Origin: Guillardia theta CCMP2712 | Taxonomy: Eukaryota > Protista > Cryptophyta | Assembly (NCBI RefSeq): GCF_000315625.1 | Contig: NW_005434665.1 | Span: 318,844-382,843 of the forward strand | DNA: 64,000 bases | Direction: 5' to 3' | Shown: in pieces, positions 21,119-31,883 of the stretch | How positions within the stretch are numbered: the first letter of the stretch is position 1 | Layout of the letters: the number at the start of each line of letters is the position of its first letter | Translations under genes and position numbers: made by a program | The notes under the pieces: generated by a model | The model's database searches: none | Told to the model about the DNA's origin: nothing | Seen by the model: only the letters and a program-made list of their open reading frames with translations

Positions 21119-22695
21119 TCAGGTTGAGTCGCTTGAGTCGCTCCCACTGCTCGCCCTCCGCTCTGCTTCTCCTACTTTCTTAGCGCTTGCCCCTACTTGT
21201 AAGTACGCGACTTGATCTAAATGCGCAGCTCCGACAGACTTTGCGTGTAGTGCCACTCCTCTCTCAGACAAGGAGCTCGAAGGGACTCCTCCCTGCTCCA
21301 GGTCAGCCTCCACAGGCTTTGCAACTGGCATCACAGATTCCATATCATGAGCTGGAGCTGGAGTCGAGCTGCCTGTTGTCCATTCGTCGGGATGACAGCA
21401 TAGCGAGCACATGATGATTGAAGACGTGAGCTGTACAACGAAGAGCATGAAGTTGAATACAAAGATCGCCCATGCACTGCCAGTGAATGTCGAGCAGAAC
21501 TTGCTCCCGCCGTATATCTCGTAGTCACCTGAGAGCAAGAACTTATCAGCATACTAATTACTTAGCATTGTCATCATGACAACGTACCGCAAAAAGTAGT
21601 GGCGAAAAGCGCGTATATGATAGCAAAAGACATGGCATTTAACAACAAGAAGATATCGCAGATTAGGAATGCCAGGTGGAAACCTCCCCATATCTTGTTT
21701 CGAAACTTACTGGTCGCAATCCCAAGACCTCCGAAGACGAGAGTGAAGATACCAGGAACGAGTCCCCATATTCCTATAAGCAAGAGCCCAGCCTTTGCGT
21801 CCCTTCTGTCTTGTTCACAAGTCGAAAAGCTATAGTAGTAATAGTCCGAAGACCGAATGGTTGAAGTAGAAATGTTGCTGTTGTTGATCTTGTTTTTGGT
21901 GCTTTTTTGAATCCATCTCAAACTTCCAAGAAGGTTTGTGAGAGCACGGCGATTGCTGTACCCCGCGTTGTAGCCCGAGTTGTACGCCGAGGGCATATCT
22001 TGATTGTAGTCCGAGGTTGAGGATTGGTCTGCTCTGTCGCTGTTGTAGTAGCCCGAGTAATAGCCTGTGTTGTAGTAGCCTGAATAGCCGTAGGTGTCAT
22101 AAATGCTATGACCGGTGTTGTACCCCGAGTTGAAGCCCGCGTTGAAGCCCGAGTTGTACGCTAGCCTGTAGGTGGTCAACGCGTCTCCCTGGTCGTATCC
22201 GTTGCAGTATCCGGAGTTGTATCCGGAGTTGTATCCAGAGTTGTAGTCATAGCTATGCCCCGACAAGGCGCTCGAGCTGTATGCTCCGCTTTTCCCGGTG
22301 TAGTAGGCGGTGGAGTACAGGGTGCTGGTGTAGTCATAGGAGGAGTATCCGTTGTTGACGCTGGAGTAAGCGGAGTTGTATCCGTAATTGTAGTATCCCT
22401 TGTTGTATCCCCTATTGTATCCGTAGTTGTATCCGTCATTGTAGCTTGACCTGAACGTCGTGTCGTATCCTTTGTTGAAGCCCTTGTTGTATCCGTAGTT
22501 GTATCCGGTGTTGTATCCAGAGTTGTATCCGGAGTTGGAGGAGGAAGAGCTGCTGCTGCTCGAGGATGAAGACGAAGACGGGCAGGTTGGGGGCGTGTAG
22601 GCGGCTGGGACCACTCCAGCAATGAACAAGGCGAACCCGAGCACCATGCTCACGATGGTCGCAGGAAAGATAGAAGTCATGGAACAGTTGCACAT
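21119..22695 (-). CDS. Four-TM MS4A/CD20-like membrane protein with long Tyr/Asn/Gly/Ser (YNxG) repeat loop, paralogue A (intron 21587-21529)
   Basis: TM1 IVSMVLGFALFIAGVV; ~250-aa YNSG/YNTG/YNKG repeat region; TM2 IGIWGLVPGIFTLVFGGLGIA; TM3; TM4 AWAIFVFNFMLFVVQL followed by CSLCC. ORFs 21574-22773 and 21119-21538 join by a 59-nt intron. Confidence 0.8.
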
Positions 22696-22781
22696 GGTTG
22701 GTAGCTGTGGGTATGTTCGAGTACTGAAGCAATGGAGCAAGTTGTGATGGCGAAGCACTCGCACCTGCTCCACTTATGTTT

Positions 22782-22833
22782 CCCCTACATCCCCTACATC
22801 CCCTACATCCTCTACATCCCCTACATCCCCTAC
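22782..22833 (+). repeat. 9-bp tandem repeat (CCCCTACAT)x5
   Basis: Directly visible upstream of paralogue A. Confidence 0.85.
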
Positions 22834-23455
22834 CCTCCTCTCTACTTCACCTTGCACCCAGGGGTCCATGCTGGTCAACCTGCGCCCAGGCGAAGGAAGC
22901 GTGTAGGGCCTGACGCATCGCAAATGTCACCAAGAGCCTTAGCAGGCCACCCCCACCCCCTCTATACCCCTGAAAGATGCTAGTACCGGTTGCTTCTTGA
23001 AGGGGGTAGAAAAACATTGCCATCAACACGTATCCTTTCGCACCTACTGCAGTTAAGTCGATGCAGGTTTTAATTGCAAGCAGCTTGAAGCAACATCATA
23101 TCACAACCAGTAGGTTTTCATTGCAAGCAACATGAAGCATATGCTGTGCAACACTCCAACATGAGCGCGCCATCGTTAGGCAGTGAATGGACCCCCGCCA
23201 CATCCCAAATCCTAAAGAGAGGTTTGATACTATGGGTCCCCTACCATATCTATGTGCGAAATCCTCAGAAATCCTGCTGAAAATCGATTGGAAGGCAAAA
23301 TTCGCGAAATTTTCTCCGAAAGAATCGATTGGAGGGAAGTAGCAACAGAACCTTTTCAATGATGGAGTCTCAACATCAGACTAATCTAGTGTACCACCTA
23401 TTCAACTAGCTATTCTACCAGCCGGTCTACGCGCTGATCTTCTACCACTGCGAGA

Positions 23456-26400
23456 TCATCTCGCGGCTCTGAGGTCTCCCAGGTGCTCGGGAATCTGCTC
23501 GAGACATCAAGACCCGGAGGCGTCTCGATCGGTGCATACCTCGAGGAAGCTGACGATGGCTTCTGCTGGGGACATGACGGAGGAGGTGGAGGCAGCGGAG
23601 GTGTTGACAGGCGAAGAGATGTCTTCCTGGTCGAGCCTCTGCTCCACGCACCAAGACATCAACAGAACGCCTCTCCACCAGGACGAGCTCACCGCAAGGA
23701 GATCCTCGAGATACTTGAGGAGGGCCTGCCGCCGGTGCGAGATTACGCGGTCGCTATGGCTGCCGAAAAGTTGCTTGGACGGCAAGCGGAGGGAGGAGAC
23801 GTCGAGAAAGCGCTGGAGACGCTGGTGGAGCATGTGGAAGTCCTTGTACCTCCTGCGGATCTCCCAAGTAACGTCCTCATGCCGACACTGGAAGACGTAG
23901 ACTGTGTGGCCGTCGTGAGGACAGCTGTAGGTGCGGAGGATAAGGAGAGAGAGACTTTTGAAGTTGACGATCCTGCGAAGAGCGTGAGGAAAAAAGCGTC
24001 ACGGAAGGGATCGGAGCGACACAGCGGCAGGAGGAGAAAGAAGAGGGAGAAGGAGATAATATTAAGGATAAAAGGTGCGATGGCAGCACAGAGAAGACAA
24101 TACAATCTAGAGCAAGATGAGGAGAAACAATTGCCTCGGCATCAAAATAATGAGCAAGTGCTCGACAAGTTGCAAGACAGTTGGAAGGAGAGGAGAGCAC
24201 AATAGGGTTGGAGCGTTTGTTTGTGTGTGTTGTGGGGGGGGATTATGGAGACGAGGGTTGGAGAGAGATAATGACGGGAGGAGTCAGAGCGGGACAGCAA
24301 GACAGACACAGACAGATGGACGAAAAGGGAGAGAGGTCTACGGGTGGTGCAGACGGATAGAGGTAGGAATGGAGGCGCAGACACAGGCAAAATCGCGCAG
24401 GTACAGACAGAGAAAGAGAGAGGTAAAGAGCCAAGAATGCAAAACAGGGGGCAGGGGGGGGAGAGAGGGAGAGGGAGGGAGAGCGGGGAAGACAAGGGCA
24501 ACACGAAGAAGAGAAGACTGGTACGAAAAAACCTGTCGCAGGTGGAGACGTCACAACCCTCCATCTCAATAGGCGAGAGACTTTGAATGCAATGCTGCAT
24601 GAGTGTGCCTGCCGGCGTATCAGGTGGCGACAGATGCGACTCCTGCGCGCTCTCTCCTCTCGGTGGGGCTGCCGGGCTGCGATGCTCGCCTGTCCCAGCA
24701 TGTGGAGCGTGCGAGTGGGAGGTAGAAGAGGCGTGTGGTCTCCTCTTCCCCACACTATCCATAACCTTCTTGTCTTCTACACCGTCAACCTCGCTGAGAG
24801 TAAACGTGAAGATGATAAATCCTGCTTGCTGCTCTCCATTCTTGAGCTCCACCCGGCAAATGCCGTAGCGACAGCATGACAGAGCGAGTGCGACTCTGCC
24901 GCTGGCAGTGAGACATGCTTCTGGATCTTGGGGCTTGTGAATGACTGCGCGAATCAACAGTTCCGACGTATCTTCGTCTTCTAACATGCCATGATGGCTA
25001 AGGACAACTCGGGCATCATTCTTGTCCATCATACTTCTTGGCCCATGGCCTCGCGCTGGACATGAAAGGGGGGGCGTCAAGCTCGCATGCTGGTCGATCA
25101 TCATTTCGAAGAGGAACTCTTCTGCTCCATCATGTCCTATATTCCAGTAGAAGCTAAGAATGTTGATATCCACAAGGAGCGTTCTGCCCCTCCTGATCTC
25201 TCGAGGGCAGGCCTGAAGAGGGAGCAAAACATCCAAACAGCTCATCCTCGCTTGCAGCTCCTCGCCGTTGACATTCCAACGTTCATCGACATGATGGCTC
25301 GCATTAGAAAAATCGATCACAGCTCCTTTCCAAACACACTTGCCCGTTGCAGATTGAAATAAATGTGAGAACGAGAAATCTTTGCGGACCAAGTCAAGAT
25401 TGATGGAAACATAATGATCCGTGTCGCATGGAATGACAATGGCAGAGCCTCCCCGTCGTAGGATTTCCGTCTGATATCTCGTGATATTCTGGCCATTCGT
25501 TAATGCATATCGCAATAGGATGATGCTTGAGCTCAATATTTCCTCAAGTTTTCTGTTGTGTTTGAAGTCAACCAAGAGTAGTTTGCTGTAGTGATTCGAC
25601 AGGTGCGCTTCGACTTTCTGGCTGATCTGTTCGCTCCTCTCGTTCTGCCGTTTCATCAAGATACAACGCATCACATCTTGCACGTTCTCATTTACAACCC
25701 TACCAAGAATCTTGTCAAGTTGTGAAGTGTCGTTCCAACAACATTTTTCCTCACCTCCCTAGGGCCTGCAGTGAAGGAGCATCGACGACATTCTTGACCT
25801 TAACATACATGTGCGGCCAACCATCACTTGTCTTTGAGACATTCAAAATCAGAGATGCACAATTGAAGTTCAAGGAGAAGGCAACCGAATTCGAAGACGA
25901 CAATGAACTGGACACGGTTCCTTCAGTGTTGCTCAGCATTTGGCTCCATCCCTTCCAAAGGGGACTATCTTTGATCAGATATTCCCAAGTCAATCCTTCG
26001 ATGCTCACAACCTTGCCAAATCAGTGACAACCAGCAGCAGGAAGAGACCGTGACTTACTTGCTTCGTTTGGATTGAAGCCATGTCGATATGAGTGGCTAC
26101 TGAAGACACGAGCTTGAAATTCCCTCCTTTCACCTCAGGTCCAGCTTCATAGTCGGCATGTTTCTCTTCTGCCATTGTCACCGTGAAGGATCGAATATCA
26201 AACGCCCCGACAGGGAGGAATTCGTCCAGCTGATTCTTGAGAGACCTGTCAACAAGGGCAGGCAGATTGTCGGGAAGGATGATCAACAAGCGAAAGGCAT
26301 CAAACAAGATACGTGAAGCTCTACCGCATGCAGACGGACTCTGCTCCCAACCTGAACCATCTCTTCCTTTGCTGCGGGAGTCGATTATCGGCTCATCAAC

Positions 26401-27256
26401 AAATAATTGCAACAAGACTTGATCCATGGCCAGCACTTCAGTGAGCAGATACAGGCACAAGACGTGAGCATCAGCCCGAGAAAGTACTTTCGCAACAAAA
26501 TAACTTTCACACGATTCCGAAAGGCAGTTCAGCACAAGAAACACTCTCTTGCAACTGCCTTCTTGAGGACAGGCGCACGCGTCCTTGTCCACCATGTAGT
26601 AGTTCCAAGCAGCAAATGACAACATGAGCATGTTTGTGTTCATGTCTGATGTGACAGCAAGAAGCTGGACTGACAAGTAAATAAAGATGCATTTGATAAT
26701 TGAGAATCCTATCCTGTTCGAGAATGAAGAGAGGCAGCAATCCATGCTTGTACCAGATTTGTAGCCACACGAGTATACTCACCACAACTGCCAAATACGA
26801 GATGACACGCTTGTCTCTTGCATCTTCACTTCCATGAGTTGAGATATTGGAAATACAGGGCCTCCTCTCCTTCACTCGCGGTCTCTCCTGCCTCTTCCGA
26901 TAGCAAGTTCGCCTCCTACGCCTCCCTCGCCATGCTGCTGGTACATCGATTGAGCCTGATTCAAACTGATTCGCCTTTGATTCAAATGGATTCAACCGCA
27001 CAAAAGAGGCGGACTCGAAGTTGGCCCAGCCGCCGGCGACTCCCGTGTTTGAGAGTCAAGTCCTCTTCCTTGGCCAGTGAAAGAAGCAAGTTTGCTCCGC
27101 CGGGCAAGTTTGCCTTTTCTCTTTCCGAAGTTCAGCTTCGGACCGTACCGTATCGACCCGCCTCACCAAAATACTAGGTCGGTAGAGGAGGCAGCGAAAA
27201 CTGCTACAAGCTTGAGGGCTCACTGAGTCCTGACGAGTCGTAGTGACATAAACCAT
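23456..27256 (-). CDS. Multi-exon protein with N-terminal TM segments and C-terminal PX (phox) domain; start uncertain
   Basis: PX: GHTVYVFQCRHEDVTWEIRRRYKDFHMLHQRL...LPSKQLFGSHSDRVISHRRQALLKYLEDLL (~23695-23915). Hydrophobic VISYLAVVVSILVWLQIW / IGFSIIKCIFIYLSVQLL near 26650-26810. Long exons in ORFs 26005-26745, 25751-26008 and 24142-25683. Stop TGA at 23456. Confidence 0.75.
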
Positions 27257-27409
27257 GTCCCAGGCGGTAGAGAGGACCCTACCCCATCACTACCCGAAAA
27301 CCACCCAACCCCATGCCCCCTATCCTTCTCTTCATATACTTACCCTCGCTCCTCCTCTCTTGCCTTGCTAGTAAAAGCCCATCCCTCCTGCCTCGTACAT
27401 CCACCCGAT

Positions 27410-28188
27410 ATGTGTAAGTGTTCCAGCTCCTCCGTCCTTCCTGCGACCATCGTGAGCATGGTGCTCGGGTTCGCCTTGTTCATTGCTGGAGTGGTCCCAG
27501 CCGCCTATAAGCCCCCAGCCTGCCCGTCTCCGTCTTCATCCTCGAGCAGCAGCAGCTCTTCCTCCTCCAACTCCGGAAACTACGACACCGGATACAACAC
27601 CGGATACAACACCGGATACAACAAGGGCTTCAACAAAGGATACGACACGACGTTCAGGTCAAGCTACAATGACGGATACAACTACGGATACAACTCCGGA
27701 TACAACAAGGGATACTACAATTACGGATACAACTCCGCTTACTCCAGCATCAACAACGGATACTCCTCCTATGACTACACCAGCACCCTGTACTCCACCG
27801 CCTACTACACCGGGAAAAGCGGAGCATACAGCTCGAGCGCCTTGTCGGGGCATAGCTATGACTACAACTCTGGATACAACTCCGGATACAACTCCGGATA
27901 CTGCAACGGATACGACCAGGGAGACGCGTTGACCACCTACAGGCTAGCGTACAACTCGGGCTTCAACGCGGGCTTCAACTCGGGGTACAACACCGGTCAT
28001 AGCATTTATGACACCTACGGCTATTCAGGCTACTACAACACAGGCTATTACTCGGGCTACTACAACAGCGACAGAGCAGACCAATCCTCAACCTCGGACT
28101 ACAATCAAGATATGCCCTCGGCGTACAACTCGGGCTACAACGCGGGGTACTACAGCGGCTCCTACTCACAGACGTCGAGCTCATACGG

Positions 28189-28225
<37 letters not shown>

Positions 28226-28944
28226 TCATATTCATACAAATACTATTACTCAAGTTGTTACAGTGACAACAGTGAGGCAAAGTCTTTCCTCGTTTTCTTA
28301 GGAGTATGGGGAATCGTTCCTGGTATCTTCACTCTCGTCTTCGGAGGTCTTGGGATCGCGTTCAGCCGCATGCGAACGAAGCTGCTGGGAGGCTTTCACC
28401 TCGCGTACCTGATCATTGACATCCTTTTGTTGATGACTAGCATGATCATTTCCTTCTACTTCGGATTGTTTGCCTCAGTGGTTTGTGGTGAGTTGTCTGC
28501 AAGTGCTGTAAGCTGGATAGAGGCGCTGACGGCTTTGTGATTTCTGCAGATGAATACGAGATATACGGCAAGTTCTGCTCGACATTCACTGGCAGTGCAT
28601 GGGCGATCTTTGTATTCAGCTTCATGCTCTTCGTTGTACAGCTCACGTCTTCAATCATCATGTGCTCGCTATGCTGTCATCCCGACGAATGGACAACAGG
28701 CAGCTCGACTCCAGCTCATGATATGGAGGCTCAAATGCCTGTGGCAAGCGTTGCATTTGCCAAGCATGAACCCAGCCCTGCTGTCCAGCCGAAGGGAGTT
28801 GCAGCGTCGAAGTCGGAGACGAGCAAACCTCGGGTCGACGGCCCTCCTCCCGTTTCAGCTCTGAGCAGCCAGCCATTTACCCGCGAGCATCCTGCTGCAA
28901 GCGAGTCGTCCGTAAGCGCTTCCTCGTCGGAATCTGATGTTTGA
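27410..28944 (+). CDS. Four-TM MS4A/CD20-like membrane protein with YNxG repeat loop, paralogue B (intron 28488-28548)
   Basis: Same architecture and intron position as paralogue A, in inverted orientation; repeat region nearly identical in DNA. Confidence 0.8.
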
Positions 28945-29279: not shown

Positions 29280-29530
29280 CGAAAGCCCATCCCTCCCTTA
29301 TGCATCTACCAACTATGAATATGGAGGCTTATACATCTACCAACTATATGTTAGTACTCCAACTCCTCCGTCCTTCCTGCAAGCATACTACGACTGCGGA
29401 TACAACTCAGCTTCCTCCGGACATTCCCCCTATGACTACACCAGCACCCTATACTCCACCACCGCGTACAACTCGGGGTACAACACCGGTCACAGCACTT
29501 ATGTCAGCTACCATAACCCGTACTAGTACC
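29280..29530 (+). pseudogene. Heavily deleted third copy of the YNxG gene
   Basis: Collinear scraps: aagcccatccctcc, ctcctccgtccttcctgc, cctatgactacaccagcaccct.tactccacc, tacaactcggggtacaacaccggtca. Confidence 0.75.
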
Positions 29531-29829: not shown

Positions 29830-30200
29830 TGTCGCTCTGATCCCTTCCGTGACGCTTCTTCTCACGCTCTTCTTGGGATCGTCAACTTCAAAAGTCTCTC
29901 TCTCCTTATCCTCCCCACCTACAGCTGTCCTCACGACGGCCACATCGTCACTAGGATCTCCTTGCGGTGAGCTCGTCCTGGTGGAGAGGCGTTCTGTTGA
30001 TGTCTTGGTGCGTGGAGCAGAGGCTCGACCAGGAAGACATCTCTTCGCCTGTCAACACCTCCGCTGCCTCCACCTCCTCCGTCATGTCCCCAGCAGAAGC
30101 CATCGTCAGCTTCCTCGAGGTATGCACCGATCGAGACGCCTCCGGGTCTTGATGTCTCGAGCAGATTCCCGAGCACCTGGGAGACCTCAGAGCCGCGAGA
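29830..30200 (+). pseudogene. 3' remnant of the PX gene with the PX core deleted
   Basis: Reverse complement of ~23459-24020, introns included. About 200 bp (23706-23904) are replaced by tcgtcacta at 29945-29953. Confidence 0.85.
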
Positions 30201-31883
30201 GGATCTTGTGAGCAGCGGTAAGGCCGCTCATGCCTGCCGCCTGCACCCTGTCAAGAGAGAAGTCAGTCGCCAGGGAGCGCATGGAAGCAAGGAGGCGAGG
30301 AAGAAGTCAGTGAATACCCATGATAGATATCAGCCAGTCCAGAACTTGTGAAGTCCCCGCAGACAGCAATCTTCATCTCTTCGTTGGAGGTCTCAGTCAA
30401 GCTTCCCGCACAGAAGGCTGAGCCCCATCGATGAAGGATCGGCCCGAAGGAAGCTTTCTATTGGCGGGTCATTGGCATGGCAACAAAGGAGACAGGAGAA
30501 GCTACTACCTTGGGCAGGTCATAGCCAAGTTCCTTGAGCAGCGCCTCTCCGCTCCTGCATAGCTCCTCGAGGACAATCTTCTCTTTTTCCTTGTTCTCTT
30601 CCGACCTCCATCTGTCCGACAGCTTCGCAGCAGCACTCGTCGACCCATAGACCTCCTCGTACTTGCGAGCGAAGTCATGGGTGGAGTGCAGTACCAGGGA
30701 GGAGAATCCCCCGACGTTGTTGCGGATGACTCGTGAGATCACATCATGATGGGATACATCCAGCACGTCAAACGGAAGAGAGTCGATCATGTCTGCTCCT
30801 TCCCCCTGGTAGGCGAGCATCGCCACCATGACCGGCGATGATCTCACAGCCTGCAGCTCTCCCACCAGCGAGTTGAGCGCTGGGAACTCTTGGCTGTGAA
30901 GGAGATATTTCATTCTCAACGGTCAGTCTCAGCGCATCAAGGAAGAATCGACTAACCTGAGCTTCTGAAGAGGCGGCGGCGAGCCGAACACTTGCTCCCA
31001 GCGTTTGTGTCCGACGGTGTGACTGGTGACCACACACCAATCGAATCTACCAACCTCCTTCTTCATGCAGAGTCAGCGGCATCTTCGTGCCCTCCTTCCT
31101 CATCAACCTTCTCCTTGTCGAAGAAGACCCACTCGCCATCCCTCTTTGAAATCTCCGATACCTGAGTCTGCAAATGTTTACAATGAGGTCGAAAGCCCTT
31201 GTGGGAGGAATACCTGGTACTGTACTTGTACACCTTCAAGCAGGGACTCACAGAGAGAAGTCATGTCAGGCTGAGCCACAAACTTCTTCGCCATCTTCAC
31301 TTGCTCCATCCCTTTGGTCTTCCAATCCAACGAGTAGACTTGAGCGCTGCTCTCCTTCACCACTCCCTTGGAGACATAGCGCTCCATCAGGCCCGTGAAC
31401 TCGGGGTCGTCGACCACGAACAACGGAGCTCCGTGGTTGATCGCAAGTCCTGGATGCTCTCTTGTCTTTCTCGTCGCCATGCGACCTCCAGCTCCCCTCC
31501 CCTGTCATCGAGTCACCCTCAGATCGCATGTGAGACACGCCAACCATCTCGAAGACGGAAACCGAGGCGCCAGCATCTTGAAGTACACGAGCCAGGGAGC
31601 TTCCGGCTATACCCGCACCCACAACTCCAACCCGTTGCATCCCCTTGAGGGAGTGAGAGAGAGAGGAGGACATGCTGCGGCATGTGTAAGGCTCTGCTAC
31701 TCGATGCAGGGTCAACGATGATTGATGAGGAGAAAACGCCGCAGGAGTGTAAGAAGAGCTTGGAAAGGCGGAGGAGGCAGAGGAAGGAGGAGGAGGAGGA
31801 GGAGGAGGAGGATGGAATGCTGCAGGGCTGCTGAGAGAGCAGAGCATCGGGAGCATCCCAGCGAAAGTTCGCCTCCCCAGCAT
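30187..31883 (-). CDS. Renalase-like FAD/NAD(P)-dependent oxidoreductase, probably plastid-targeted
   Basis: Presequence MLGRRTFAGMLPMLCSLSSPAA-F; Rossmann VGVVGAGIAG...VSVFEM..GGRMATR..INHGAPLF; C-terminal HRWGSAF, CGDF, GVQAAGMSGLTAAHKILSRL*. Confidence 0.85.

What the first reader, a model, noticed from the sequence alone, without database searches (positions are those of the whole stretch)
21119..28944. Tetraspan membrane proteins displaying a ~250-aa YNxG tyrosine-repeat ectodomain
Seen: two genes with MS4A/CD20-like topology (TM2 GxWGxxPGIFxxxxGGLGI, a Cys pair in the TM3-TM4 loop, juxtamembrane Cys clusters). The TM1-TM2 loop, tiny in MS4A proteins, here holds dozens of 4-residue G-Y/F-N-x units grouped in blocks, with poly-Ser and a Cys near each end. 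Established: GxxxG runs of this type form helix-packing repeats (FliH/Yae1-like), and Y/N/G/S-rich low-complexity domains self-assemble or crosslink via dityrosine. Inference: an undescribed membrane-anchored self-assembling adhesive or coat protein (periplast, ejectisome membrane or cell recognition).
Basis: partly seen in the sequence, partly recalled or inferred. Interest (0 to 1): 0.75.

Follow-up and report, generated by a model that had tools for sequence, protein, structure and literature searches.

The report
Algal four-helix membrane protein, tyrosine-repeat loop
Two mirror-image genes of the cryptophyte alga Guillardia theta encode small CD20-like four-helix membrane proteins whose first outer loop has grown into a 250-residue tyrosine/asparagine/glycine/serine repeat domain; the family is real, uncharacterised and so far seen only in cryptophytes, and its function is still a guess.

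Summary
Two inverted two-exon genes (B: 27410-28944 +; A: 22695-21119 -) each encode four hydrophobic helices. A 250-260-aa loop lies between TM1 and TM2: S 26%, Y 21%, G 13%, N 11%, with period-4 G-Y/F-N-x units in seven blocks, poly-Ser at both ends and a bracketing Cys pair.

The loop is coding. An intronless paralogue reads straight through it, and dN/dS between paralogues is 0.19-0.41.

The genome holds about 13 loci. An exhaustive HMMER search of 1.84 billion proteins found 22 relatives; the named ones are all cryptophytes (Guillardia, Hanusia, Proteomonas) and the rest are environmental. Many relatives have a tiny TM1-TM2 loop. One paralogue carries an SRCR domain in the loop and Proteomonas a Cys-rich module, so the loop is an extracytoplasmic insertion site.

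The CD20/MS4A idea is partly borne out:
- One short-loop relative passes Pfam's CD20 threshold.
- 7 of 13 relatives match weakly and in register.
- The best Foldseek hit is FcεRIβ.
- The window genes themselves stay below threshold.

I read this as a new variant of a CD20-like scaffold that displays a self-associating surface domain. The function is inferred. Expression of these two genes is not shown. Other first-stage notes flagged this stretch and a paralogue; none was followed up.

The parts
27410..28487 (+). Gene B exon 1: N-terminal M-C-K-C, TM1, the 250-aa repeat loop, TM2, a K/R-rich cytosolic turn, and TM3 ending in Cys
   Evidence: ORF and sequence. Splice donor G|GTGAGT lies at 28487/28488. 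The same junction is read through without an intron in paralogue L003.
28488..28549 (+). Gene B intron: 62 nt, GT..AG, phase 1
   Evidence: The position is shared by most paralogues and the intron is absent in L003.
28550..28944 (+). Gene B exon 2: the short TM3-TM4 loop with its Cys (KFC), TM4 ending C-S-L-C-C, H-P-D-E-W, and a C-terminal tail with the M-P-V-A motif. Stop codon at 28942-28944.
27443..27508 (+). Gene B TM1 (residues 12-33), read as an uncleaved signal anchor
   Evidence: Hydropathy. TM1 is conserved across the family. It packs in the bundle at pLDDT 77-93. The hydrophobic run is 22 residues, with P-A-A-Y before the loop and no small residues at -3 and -1.
27509..28258 (+). Gene B TM1-TM2 loop (residues 34-283): Cys38, Ser12, seven blocks of G-Y/F-N-x units, central Cys165, Ser13, Cys283
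   Evidence: dN/dS is 0.19-0.41 against paralogues at other loci. There are no N-x-S/T sequons, against 8.7 expected.
28286..28360 (+). Gene B TM2 with the family motif G-x-W-G-x-x-P-G-I-F-x-L-x-F-G-G-L-G-I
28597..28677 (+). Gene B TM4 (A-W-A-I-F-V-F...S-I-I-M-C-S-L-C-C)
   Evidence: This stretch is 99% identical to gene A at the DNA level.
21588..22695 (-). Gene A exon 1: same layout as gene B, with a 260-aa loop. The C-terminal poly-Ser is replaced by the divergent stretch S-N-R-R-A-L...S-T-I-R-S-S.
21529..21587 (-). Gene A intron: 59 nt, GT..AG, phase 1
21119..21528 (-). Gene A exon 2: TM3-TM4 loop, TM4, and a tail with M-P-V-A-K-P-V
21817..22596 (-). Gene A TM1-TM2 loop (residues 34-293)
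   Evidence: It is 98-100% identical to gene B over about 570 nt.
29332..29511 (+). Degenerate third relic of the 5' end and loop of the gene, collapsed and ending in a stop. This is a pseudogene fragment downstream of gene B.
   Evidence: blastn of gene B against the window, plus translation.

Best explanation
Genes A and B are recently gene-converted, inverted paralogues. They belong to a small family of four-helix membrane proteins seen so far only in cryptophytes.

The core of the family is TM1-TM4 with both ends in the cytoplasm. It has conserved juxtamembrane cysteines that are likely palmitoylated, and a conserved tail motif G-[IM]-P-[VI]-A-x-P. The core is most like the CD20/MS4A-sarcospan-tetraspanin group of tetraspan scaffolds and is probably a distant relative of it.

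In the ancestral form the first outer loop is only a few residues long and is closed by a Cys-Cys pair. In Guillardia that disulfide-bracketed loop has become an insertion site. Most paralogues, including these two, carry a 130-260-aa Ser-stalked domain there, built from period-4 G-Y/F-N-x units. One paralogue adds an SRCR domain to it, and one Proteomonas gene carries a Cys-rich module instead.

My inferred mechanism is this. The palmitoylated four-helix core sits in the plasma membrane, or another exocytic membrane, and oligomerises as CD20-like proteins do. It then presents many copies of a sticky aromatic/polar repeat domain on the outer face. Those domains associate with each other or with secreted surface material, by glycine-face helix packing or by Tyr-mediated low-complexity contacts. 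The result would be a coat or an attachment layer, with the conserved tail motif linking to a cytoplasmic partner.

Shown here: the gene models, topology elements, coding constraint, family range, loop variability and extracytoplasmic modules.

Inferred: the orientation, palmitoylation, the disulfide, oligomerisation, self-association, the location and the biological role.
For: Gene models:
- ORFs, GT..AG introns and an intronless paralogue that reads through the junction.

Topology:
- Four helices by hydropathy.
- AlphaFold four-helix bundles: P0010 at mean pLDDT 78.6, and the L003 core at 80-95.

Loop is coding and constrained:
- dN/dS is 0.19-0.41 at dS 0.44-1.7, as low as or lower than in TM2-TM3.
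- Non-repeat anchors such as Q-G-D-S-L-T-T-Y-[RK]-L are conserved between loci.

Loop faces outside:
- SRCR (PF00530, E 6e-24) sits inside the loop of the C29 paralogue.
- Proteomonas carries a Cys-rich insert.
- The TM2-TM3 turn has 3 K/R.
- N-x-S/T sequons are absent or nearly so (0-2 against 8-9.5 expected) in the five long-loop paralogues.

Loop is an insertion:
- Relatives of 190-206 aa have loops of about 6-20 residues.
- The two bracketing Cys co-occur: 9 relatives have both and 4 have neither.

Family range:
- About 13 loci in the genome.
- Only 22 representatives among 1.84e9 proteins.
- Named sources are Guillardia, Hanusia phi and Proteomonas sulcata, with transcript-derived members.

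CD20-like affinity:
- P0015 scores 32.4 bits against PF04103, above the 27.9 cut-off.
- P0010 scores 21.8 bits over profile positions 3-156 of 156.
- 7 of 13 members match.
- When the CD20 model is run over the whole genome, its best hit is a member of this family.
- The top Foldseek hit is FcεRIβ, 8y81_B (E 0.019, TM 0.61/0.72). CD20 and sarcospan are also listed.
- VIA-align Z: 14.0 for FcεRIβ, 13.9 for sarcospan, 14.3 for uroplakin Ia.

Gene conversion:
- Mosaic identity of 98-100% in TM1, loop and TM4, against about 72% in TM3, the intron and the tail.
Against: - The window genes and their closest paralogue do not reach Pfam's CD20 cut-off. L003's TM2-TM4 scores 15.4 bits, and the exon-wise scan finds nothing at E <= 1.
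- Profile searches of PDB sequences give nothing significant; FcεRIβ comes up at E 7.2.
- Z of about 14 is what unrelated helical bundles can reach (note). Tetraspanin, SUR7 and DUF4064 give comparable weak hits.
- No transcript or protein evidence was obtained for genes A and B themselves. No protein at least 64% identical and 198-628 aa long exists in the large database.
- The loop is modelled at pLDDT below 50, so its conformation is open.
- Sequon depletion may simply follow from the G at +2 in the N-x-G unit.
- Nothing locates the protein in the cell.
Confidence: 0.6

Rival explanations
1. The four-helix core is an independent, lineage-specific tetraspan family, or belongs to another 4-TM group such as MARVEL, claudin/SUR7 or tetraspanin proper. 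Its likeness to CD20/MS4A would then be convergence of short hydrophobic helices rich in Gly, Pro and Trp.
For: - All but one CD20 hit are below threshold.
- Tetraspanin matches 8 of 13 members (best 27 bits), and SUR7 reaches 25.4 bits in Proteomonas.
- UniRef labels paralogue P0002 'MARVEL domain-containing'.
- VIA-align Z-scores for uroplakin, synaptogyrin and claudin-like chains are within 1-4 units of FcεRIβ and within the helical background.
- A 2010 survey found no MS4A genes outside jawed vertebrates and treated short TM similarities as convergent (PMC2826416).
Against: - P0015 passes the curated CD20 cut-off.
- P0010 aligns over the whole CD20 profile, in register.
- Pfam MARVEL gives no hit at E <= 1 in 13 members.
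- There is no tetraspanin-type large second loop or CCG motif.
- FcεRIβ chains rank first in Foldseek with probability 1.00.
- The genome-wide best CD20-model hit is a family member.
Confidence: 0.25
2. The loop is a folded helical glycine-zipper domain of the Yae1/FliH GxxxG type that mediates defined dimerisation or oligomerisation. It would not be a disordered, prion-like or cross-linkable low-complexity coat.
For: - Gly recurs every fourth residue (z 7.7).
- Yae1_N (PF09811) hits score 19.9-24.8 bits in genes B and A. The database's precomputed Pfam list attaches PF09811 to P0002 and P0012.
- Bacterial and phage proteins with G-Y-x-x-G-Y repeats are the only non-family hits to the loop.
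- AlphaFold draws helices over the GYNx blocks (residues 68-103, 162-170, 181-200 and 231-245 of L003).
Against: - The Pfam scores are below the 27.5 cut-off.
- The predicted helices have pLDDT of only 25-43.
- N, G, S and Y are poor helix formers.
- The blocks are short (2-6 units) and separated by Ser/Tyr-rich spacers.
Confidence: 0.3
3. TM1 is a cleaved signal peptide. The mature protein would then have a free N-terminal repeat ectodomain followed by three membrane helices.
For: The N-terminus before TM1 is only 11 residues long, and the loop begins right after the hydrophobic run. No signal-peptide predictor could be run.
Against: - TM1 is 22 residues long.
- There is no small -3/-1 pair before the loop (P-A-A-Y | K-P-P).
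- TM1 is conserved through the whole family, including members with 6-residue loops.
- TM1 is covered by the CD20 profile alignment in P0010.
- TM1 packs in the bundle at high pLDDT.
- A conserved Cys2 upstream of it would be lost on cleavage.
Confidence: 0.07
4. One or both window copies are non-functional duplicates that are unexpressed or decaying. They would be preserved only by gene conversion from functional paralogues.
For: - No matching public protein or transcript-derived protein was found.
- Gene A has lost the second poly-Ser run to a divergent N/K-rich stretch that holds the only two sequons.
- A metagenomic relative (L038) carries an A-like copy lacking TM1 and most of the loop, with in-frame stops.
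- A degenerate relic lies at 29332-29511.
- The A-versus-B dN/dS is 0.56-0.64.
Against: - Both genes keep intact ORFs of about 500 codons.
- Both keep canonical splice sites at the family's conserved position.
- All conserved Cys and motifs are present.
- TM2-TM3 has diverged to dS 0.66 without a stop or frameshift.
Confidence: 0.12

Closest known systems
CD20-like / MS4A family (Pfam PF04103; CD20, FcεRIβ/MS4A2, sarcospan)
   Same: - Four-helix bundle with both termini on the same side.
- A Gly/Trp/Pro-rich TM2.
- A Cys-containing TM3-TM4 outer loop.
- Juxtamembrane cysteines.
- One family member passes the Pfam cut-off and several align in register.
- FcεRIβ is the best Foldseek match, and sarcospan and CD20 are also listed.
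   Different: - The window genes score below threshold.
- The loop sizes are inverted: here TM1-TM2 is 250 aa and TM3-TM4 about 17 aa, whereas from my own knowledge of CD20 the first loop is tiny and the second about 45 aa.
- The family comes from cryptophytes. MS4A proper has been described only in jawed vertebrates (PMC2826416), and the CD20-like family is treated as metazoan (PMC5620054).
- The tail motif G-[IM]-P-V-A-x-P was not looked for outside this family.
Tetraspanins and uroplakins (PF00335)
   Same: - Palmitoylated 4-TM scaffolds that build ordered surface arrays.
- Weak Pfam hits in 8 of 13 members.
- Uroplakin Ia gives the top VIA-align Z of 14.3.
   Different: - There is no large second loop and no CCG motif.
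- The best score, 27 bits, is below the 32.1 cut-off.
- The displayed domain sits in loop 1, not loop 2.
Yae1_N / FliH GxxxG repeat segments (PF09811) and bacterial or phage G-Y-x-x-G-Y repeat proteins
   Same: - Glycine at every fourth position with Tyr next to it.
- Sub-threshold Pfam matches.
- Bacterial 'Yae1 family' proteins are the only outside hits to the loop.
   Different: - This loop is rich in Asn and Ser rather than in acidic residues and Ala.
- It is interrupted by Ser/Tyr spacers.
- It is placed in an extracytoplasmic, disulfide-bracketed loop of a membrane protein.
- Homology is doubtful; the match may be repeat convergence.
Tyr/Gly/Ser-rich low-complexity domains (FUS-type) and Tyr-rich structural proteins cross-linked by dityrosine
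   Same: - S, Y, G and N make up 71% of the loop.
- There are almost no aliphatic residues (7 of 250).
- Aromatic residues are regularly spaced.
   Different: - There are only 3-5 [GS]Y[GS] motifs.
- The strict period-4 order and the positional conservation between paralogues point to a defined structure or contact pattern.
- No assembly or cross-linking data exist. This comparison rests on my own knowledge and was not tested.

Membership tests
CD20-like / MS4A (PF04103) | Sequence match to the family profile at or above the curated cut-off of 27.9 bits | tested here: inconclusive
   - Window genes, scanned exon by exon: no hit at E <= 1.
- Paralogue L003, TM2-TM4: 15.4 bits.
- Family relatives: P0015 32.4 bits (passes), P0010 21.8 bits end to end, 7 of 13 with weak hits.
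- The link from the window genes to P0015 is a family profile at E 7e-17.
CD20-like / MS4A (PF04103) | Four transmembrane helices with N- and C-termini cytoplasmic | tested here: met
   Four helices by hydropathy and AlphaFold. The orientation is inferred from the SRCR and Cys-rich modules in loop 1 and from the K/R-rich TM2-TM3 turn. It has not been shown experimentally.
CD20-like / MS4A (PF04103) | Very short first outer loop and a longer Cys-containing second outer loop | tested here: not met
   In genes A and B, loop 1 is 250-260 aa and loop 2 about 17-19 aa. Short-loop relatives such as P0010, P0015 and P0016 do fit this feature.
CD20-like / MS4A (PF04103) | Fold match to solved MS4A structures standing above other folds | tested here: inconclusive
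   FcεRIβ is the top Foldseek hit (E 0.019, TM 0.61/0.72). VIA-align gives Z 14.0 for FcεRIβ and 10.2 for CD20, but uroplakin scores 14.3 and designed bundles 13.4, within the helical background.
Tetraspanin (PF00335) | Profile match above 32.1 bits, and a large second loop with a CCG motif | tested here: not met
   The best score is 27.0 bits. The second loop is under 35 aa and has no CCG in any member.
MARVEL (label given by UniRef to paralogue P0002) | Match to the MARVEL domain profile | tested here: not met
   MARVEL (which I recall as PF01284) is absent from the Pfam hits at E <= 1 for all 13 members scanned, and from the scans of L003 at E <= 10. The PROSITE profile behind the label could not be run.
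Yae1_N / FliH GxxxG repeat (PF09811) | Runs of G-x-x-x-G | tested here: met
   Lag-4 Gly autocorrelation is 17 observed against 3.9 expected, z 7.7. The units fall in seven blocks.
Yae1_N / FliH GxxxG repeat (PF09811) | Profile match above 27.5 bits, and a helical conformation | tested here: inconclusive
   Scores are 19.9 bits for B and 24.8 bits for A, both below the cut-off. AlphaFold draws helices on the blocks, but at pLDDT 25-43.
Prion-like / self-assembling low-complexity domain | Concentration-dependent self-assembly, or an amyloid or dityrosine signal | not testable with these tools
   Only composition could be measured. The ESM Atlas gave no usable hit for the loop.

The most novel reading that the evidence does not exclude
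The family would be the membrane anchor of the cryptophyte cell surface. A CD20-like scaffold outside animals would have turned its first loop into an exchangeable display site. The Tyr/Asn/Gly repeat version would self-assemble on the outer face into the surface layer of the periplast, for example the 'knobbly' plasma-membrane surface seen in Guillardia theta (PMC6212826). The conserved cytoplasmic tail motif would tie it to the inner periplast sheet. That would give the first molecular handle on how the cryptophyte plasma membrane is sandwiched between two protein layers. It would also push the CD20-like fold back to deep eukaryotic ancestry.
Probability: 0.15. Interest if true: 0.75.

Novelty: new variant of a known kind. 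Interest (0 to 1): 0.5.

Why it matters
Cryptophytes wrap their plasma membrane between an inner and an outer protein layer. The inner layer's proteins (epiplastins) have been proposed (PMC6212826). I found no report of a membrane-spanning or outer-face component.

This family has three properties that make it a concrete candidate for such a component:
- It is multigene (about 13 loci) and so far seen only in cryptophytes.
- It is under purifying selection.
- It displays variable extracytoplasmic modules from one disulfide-closed loop: a Tyr-repeat domain, an SRCR domain and a Cys-rich module.

It is also a natural example of a tetraspan scaffold used as a display platform.

If the CD20-like relationship holds, the fold is not confined to animals. 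That revises the view that CD20-like proteins are a metazoan or vertebrate invention (PMC2826416, PMC5620054).

The period-4 G-Y-N-x domain is also a compact natural system for asking whether such repeats fold as glycine-zipper helices or act as aromatic 'sticker' low-complexity domains.

Tried and rejected
- The first alignment of exon fragments (A1) put TM3 onto TM4 and was discarded. A2 was rebuilt with shorter fragments plus two read-through rows.
- Profile searches of PDB sequences with A2 and A4 gave nothing significant.
- The word-index search with the TM2-TM4 region found only one protein, the mis-modelled fusion GUITHDRAFT_99158.
- The ESM Atlas gave no usable hit for the loop, and only leads below 0.9 for the core.
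- Foldseek against viral models gave only weak 4-TM look-alikes from giant viruses. I do not read these as kinship.
- A search of the genome for animal-type haem peroxidase, as a possible dityrosine cross-linker, was uninformative because the control rang nowhere.
- No paper mentions the six GUITHDRAFT identifiers of the annotated paralogues.
- Looking for transcript contigs of a spliced Guillardia paralogue found none on record.
- I considered that the divergent 129-nt stretch of gene A before TM2 is an extra in-frame intron (GG|GTACAG ... TATAG|C). The metagenomic relative lacks that acceptor AG, so I left the stretch as coding but uncertain.
- The exons of genes A and B were not joined for any search or fold. 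They were searched exon by exon by reference, and full-length work used the intronless paralogue L003 and database proteins.

Full report
**What is there**

The window is contig C9:318844-382843 of an 87.1-Mb, 669-contig genome. Database hits identify it as Guillardia theta CCMP2712.

Two ORF pairs lie in mirror orientation. Reading the DNA and locating the junctions by script gives these models:
- Gene B (+): ATG 27410, exon 1 to 28487, a 62-nt GT..AG phase-1 intron, exon 2 28550-28944. Product 490 aa.
- Gene A (-): ATG 22695, exon 1 to 21588, a 59-nt intron, exon 2 21528-21119. Product 505 aa.

The splice model is confirmed independently. A paralogue on contig C141 (L003:1156-2589:-, 478 aa) has no intron and reads ...W-I-C-E-E-Y-D-R-Y... 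straight through the same point.

They were searched exon by exon by reference. Full-length analyses used the intronless paralogue and database proteins.

**Anatomy**

Hydropathy gives four helices. In gene B the order is:
- M-C-K-C at the N-terminus.
- TM1, residues 12-33.
- The loop, residues 34-283.
- TM2, with F-L-G-V-W-G-I-V-P-G-I-F-T-L-V-F-G-G-L-G-I-A.
- An 11-residue turn with three K/R.
- TM3, ending in Cys at the intron.
- A loop of about 17 residues with a second Cys (K-F-C).
- TM4, ending C-S-L-C-C-H-P-D-E-W.
- A tail of about 85 residues.

The loop composition is S 26.4%, Y 20.8%, G 12.8% and N 10.8%, with only 7 aliphatic or Trp residues in 250. It holds 14 strict and about 30 relaxed G-Y/F-N-x units in seven blocks. 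Ser12 and Ser13 runs lie near the two ends, and Cys38 and Cys283 bracket it. Lag-4 autocorrelation is z 7.7 for Gly and z 7.1 for Tyr/Phe against shuffles.

**The loop is coding and constrained**

Five long-loop paralogues at four loci align with conserved non-repeat anchors, for example D-T-T-F-R-S-S-Y-N-D-G-Y-N-Y-G-Y-N and Q-G-D-S-L-T-T-Y-[RK]-L. Nei-Gojobori dN/dS for the loop between loci is 0.19-0.41 at dS 0.44-1.7. That is as low as or lower than for TM2-TM3, at 0.23-0.58.

A Hanusia phi sequence from the EukProt protein set (P0006) translates a shorter S/Y/N/G-rich loop in frame.

**A and B against each other**

The identity is mosaic. It is 98-100% from TM1 through most of the loop and 99% over TM4. 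It is about 72% or less over TM3, the intron, the tail and the flanks. This pattern is what patchy gene conversion between inverted copies would give.

Gene A has replaced the second poly-Ser run by a divergent N/K/S-rich stretch.

**Family and range**

Six-frame searches of the genome find about 13 loci: C141, C9 (two), C52, C1, C29, C139 (two), C36 (two), C130, C142 and C65, with a possible one on C5.

I built a TM2-TM4 profile from referenced pieces (A2) and ran it exhaustively over 1.84 billion representative proteins. It found only 22 hits. The named sources are Guillardia theta, Hanusia phi and Proteomonas sulcata, plus MMETSP transcripts of unnamed species. The rest are metagenome or Logan contigs. 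All annotated members are 'hypothetical' or 'uncharacterized'. One carries an automatic 'MARVEL domain-containing' label. No paper in the library cites the gene identifiers.

**The loop is an insertion site on the outer face**

Several relatives are only 190-206 aa long, with a TM1-TM2 loop of a few residues. In P0010 it is C-T-A-G-D-T-A-C. The two bracketing cysteines occur together or not at all: 9 relatives have both and 4 have neither. That suggests a disulfide closing the loop, though this is inference.

Three different modules occupy that loop:
- Guillardia paralogues carry 130-260-aa Y/N/G/S domains.
- The C29 paralogue also has an SRCR domain in the middle (PF00530, E 6e-24).
- The Proteomonas protein carries about 230 aa that include a Cys-rich segment.

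SRCR and Cys-rich modules are extracellular modules. Together with the K/R-rich TM2-TM3 turn, this places the loop outside the cytoplasm.

N-x-S/T sequons are absent or nearly so in the five long-loop paralogues: 0, 0, 0, 2 and 0, against 8-9.5 expected by shuffling. This could mean avoidance of N-glycosylation. It could also be a by-product of the N-x-G unit.

**TM1 is not a cleaved signal**

- It is 22 residues long and lacks a small -3/-1 pair.
- It is conserved in all members.
- It is covered by the CD20 profile alignment of P0010.
- It packs into the bundle at pLDDT 77-93.

No dedicated predictor was available.

**What the core is**

Pfam results:
- The window exons give only sub-threshold Yae1_N hits, from the repeat.
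- The L003 TM2-TM4 piece gives CD20 (PF04103) at 15.4 bits.
- Among 13 relatives scanned one by one, 7 match CD20 and 8 match Tetraspanin.
- P0015 reaches 32.4 bits for CD20, above the 27.9 cut-off. P0010 aligns over profile positions 3-156 of 156 at 21.8 bits. The best Tetraspanin score is 27.0 against a cut-off of 32.1.
- MARVEL never appears.
- Scanning the whole genome with the CD20 model puts a family member (C130, 25.1 bits) first.

Structure results:
- An AlphaFold model of P0010 (pLDDT 78.6) has FcεRIβ (MS4A2, 8y81_B) as its best Foldseek hit, at E 0.019, probability 1.00 and TM 0.61/0.72. Further FcεRIβ, sarcospan and CD20 chains are listed.
- VIA-align gives uroplakin Ia Z 14.3, FcεRIβ 14.0, sarcospan 13.9 and CD20 10.2. 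By the tool's own note this is the range that unrelated helical bundles reach.
- The ESM Atlas's first named neighbours are CD20 and Tetraspanin clusters, at sub-0.9 scores.

I conclude that the family is probably (about 70%) a distant branch of the CD20-like/tetraspanin-type tetraspans. Membership of the window genes is not proven. Their loop proportions are the reverse of MS4A.

**What the loop is**

Outside the family, the loop finds only bacterial and phage proteins with G-Y-x-x-G-Y repeats carrying PF09811.

AlphaFold models the L003 core at pLDDT 80-95. The loop is below 50, with low-confidence helices exactly over the GYNx blocks.

Two readings remain open:
- Glycine-face helices that zip together.
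- A flexible aromatic/polar 'sticker' domain.

**How it most likely works**

This section is inference. A palmitoylated four-helix core would oligomerise in the plasma or an exocytic membrane. It would hold out a disulfide-closed, Ser-stalked, Tyr-rich repeat domain. That domain would bind copies of itself or secreted surface material, forming a coat or attachment layer.

A tail motif conserved across the family, G-[IM]-P-[VI]-A-x-P, would bind a cytoplasmic partner.

The cryptophyte surface fits such a role. Guillardia has a thin inner sheet of epiplastins under a 'knobbly' plasma membrane (PMC6212826). In the reference list of that paper, the title of a 1997 study says that the outer periplast layer of Komma caudata self-assembles from a secreted polypeptide. 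No result here locates the protein.

**Limits**

- Expression of genes A and B is not shown. No protein at least 64% identical and 198-628 aa long exists in the large database, so they seem to be absent from the public gene set or mis-modelled.
- The annotated paralogue GUITHDRAFT_99158 is a fusion that skips TM3 and runs into a downstream beta-helix gene.

**Verdict**

The feature is real and uncharacterised. It is a new variant of a known kind of membrane scaffold, with an unusual and well-defined displayed repeat domain. Its functional reading is reasonable but untested.

Noticed in passing
window 23453-23711 and 29948-30206: A second inverted repeat pair (259 nt, 99%) lies beside the two genes. 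The local order is gene A - unit X ... gene B - inverted unit X, which is an inverted segmental duplication. The ORFs in X (for example 23483-24205) and between the genes (24142-25683 and 26005-26745, both on the minus strand) have no Pfam match.
   Followed up: partly
window 29332-29511 (+): A third, collapsed relic of the gene's 5' end and repeat loop lies downstream of gene B. It reads ...Y-D-C-G-Y-N-S-A-S-S-G-H-S-P-Y-D-Y-T-S-T-L-Y-S-T-T-A-Y-N-S-G-Y-N-T-G-H-S-T-Y and ends in a stop.
   Followed up: partly
L038 (ENA metagenome ERZ930071, PRJEB17505), 600-1800: A Guillardia-like environmental contig carries the same neighbour unit X and a copy that is gene-A-like in TM2-TM3 but gene-B-like in the tail. 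It lacks TM1 and most of the loop and has in-frame stops before TM2. It is either a decayed or recombinant copy, or an assembly collapse of the repeat.
   Followed up: partly
L005 / P0001 (GUITHDRAFT_99158, contig C1): The public 836-aa model of this paralogue skips TM3 and fuses the gene to a downstream right-handed beta-helix (PF13229) gene. The model looks wrong.
   Followed up: partly
L007 370-2199 (-), contig C29: This paralogue has a complete SRCR domain (PF00530, E 6e-24) inserted in the middle of the Y/N/G repeat loop. The SRCR is followed by an (S-S-S-S-T)n run.
   Followed up: yes
window 22773-22900 (-), upstream of gene A: A tandem GGGGATGTAG-like repeat (about 6 units) lies just upstream of gene A's 5' region. 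It is absent upstream of gene B (alignment A3).
   Followed up: no
G000:C89:114773-115042 and C11:1085366-1085563: Two further weak matches to the CD20 profile (20.5 and 18.5 bits) lie outside this family's loci. They may be other tetraspan genes.
   Followed up: no
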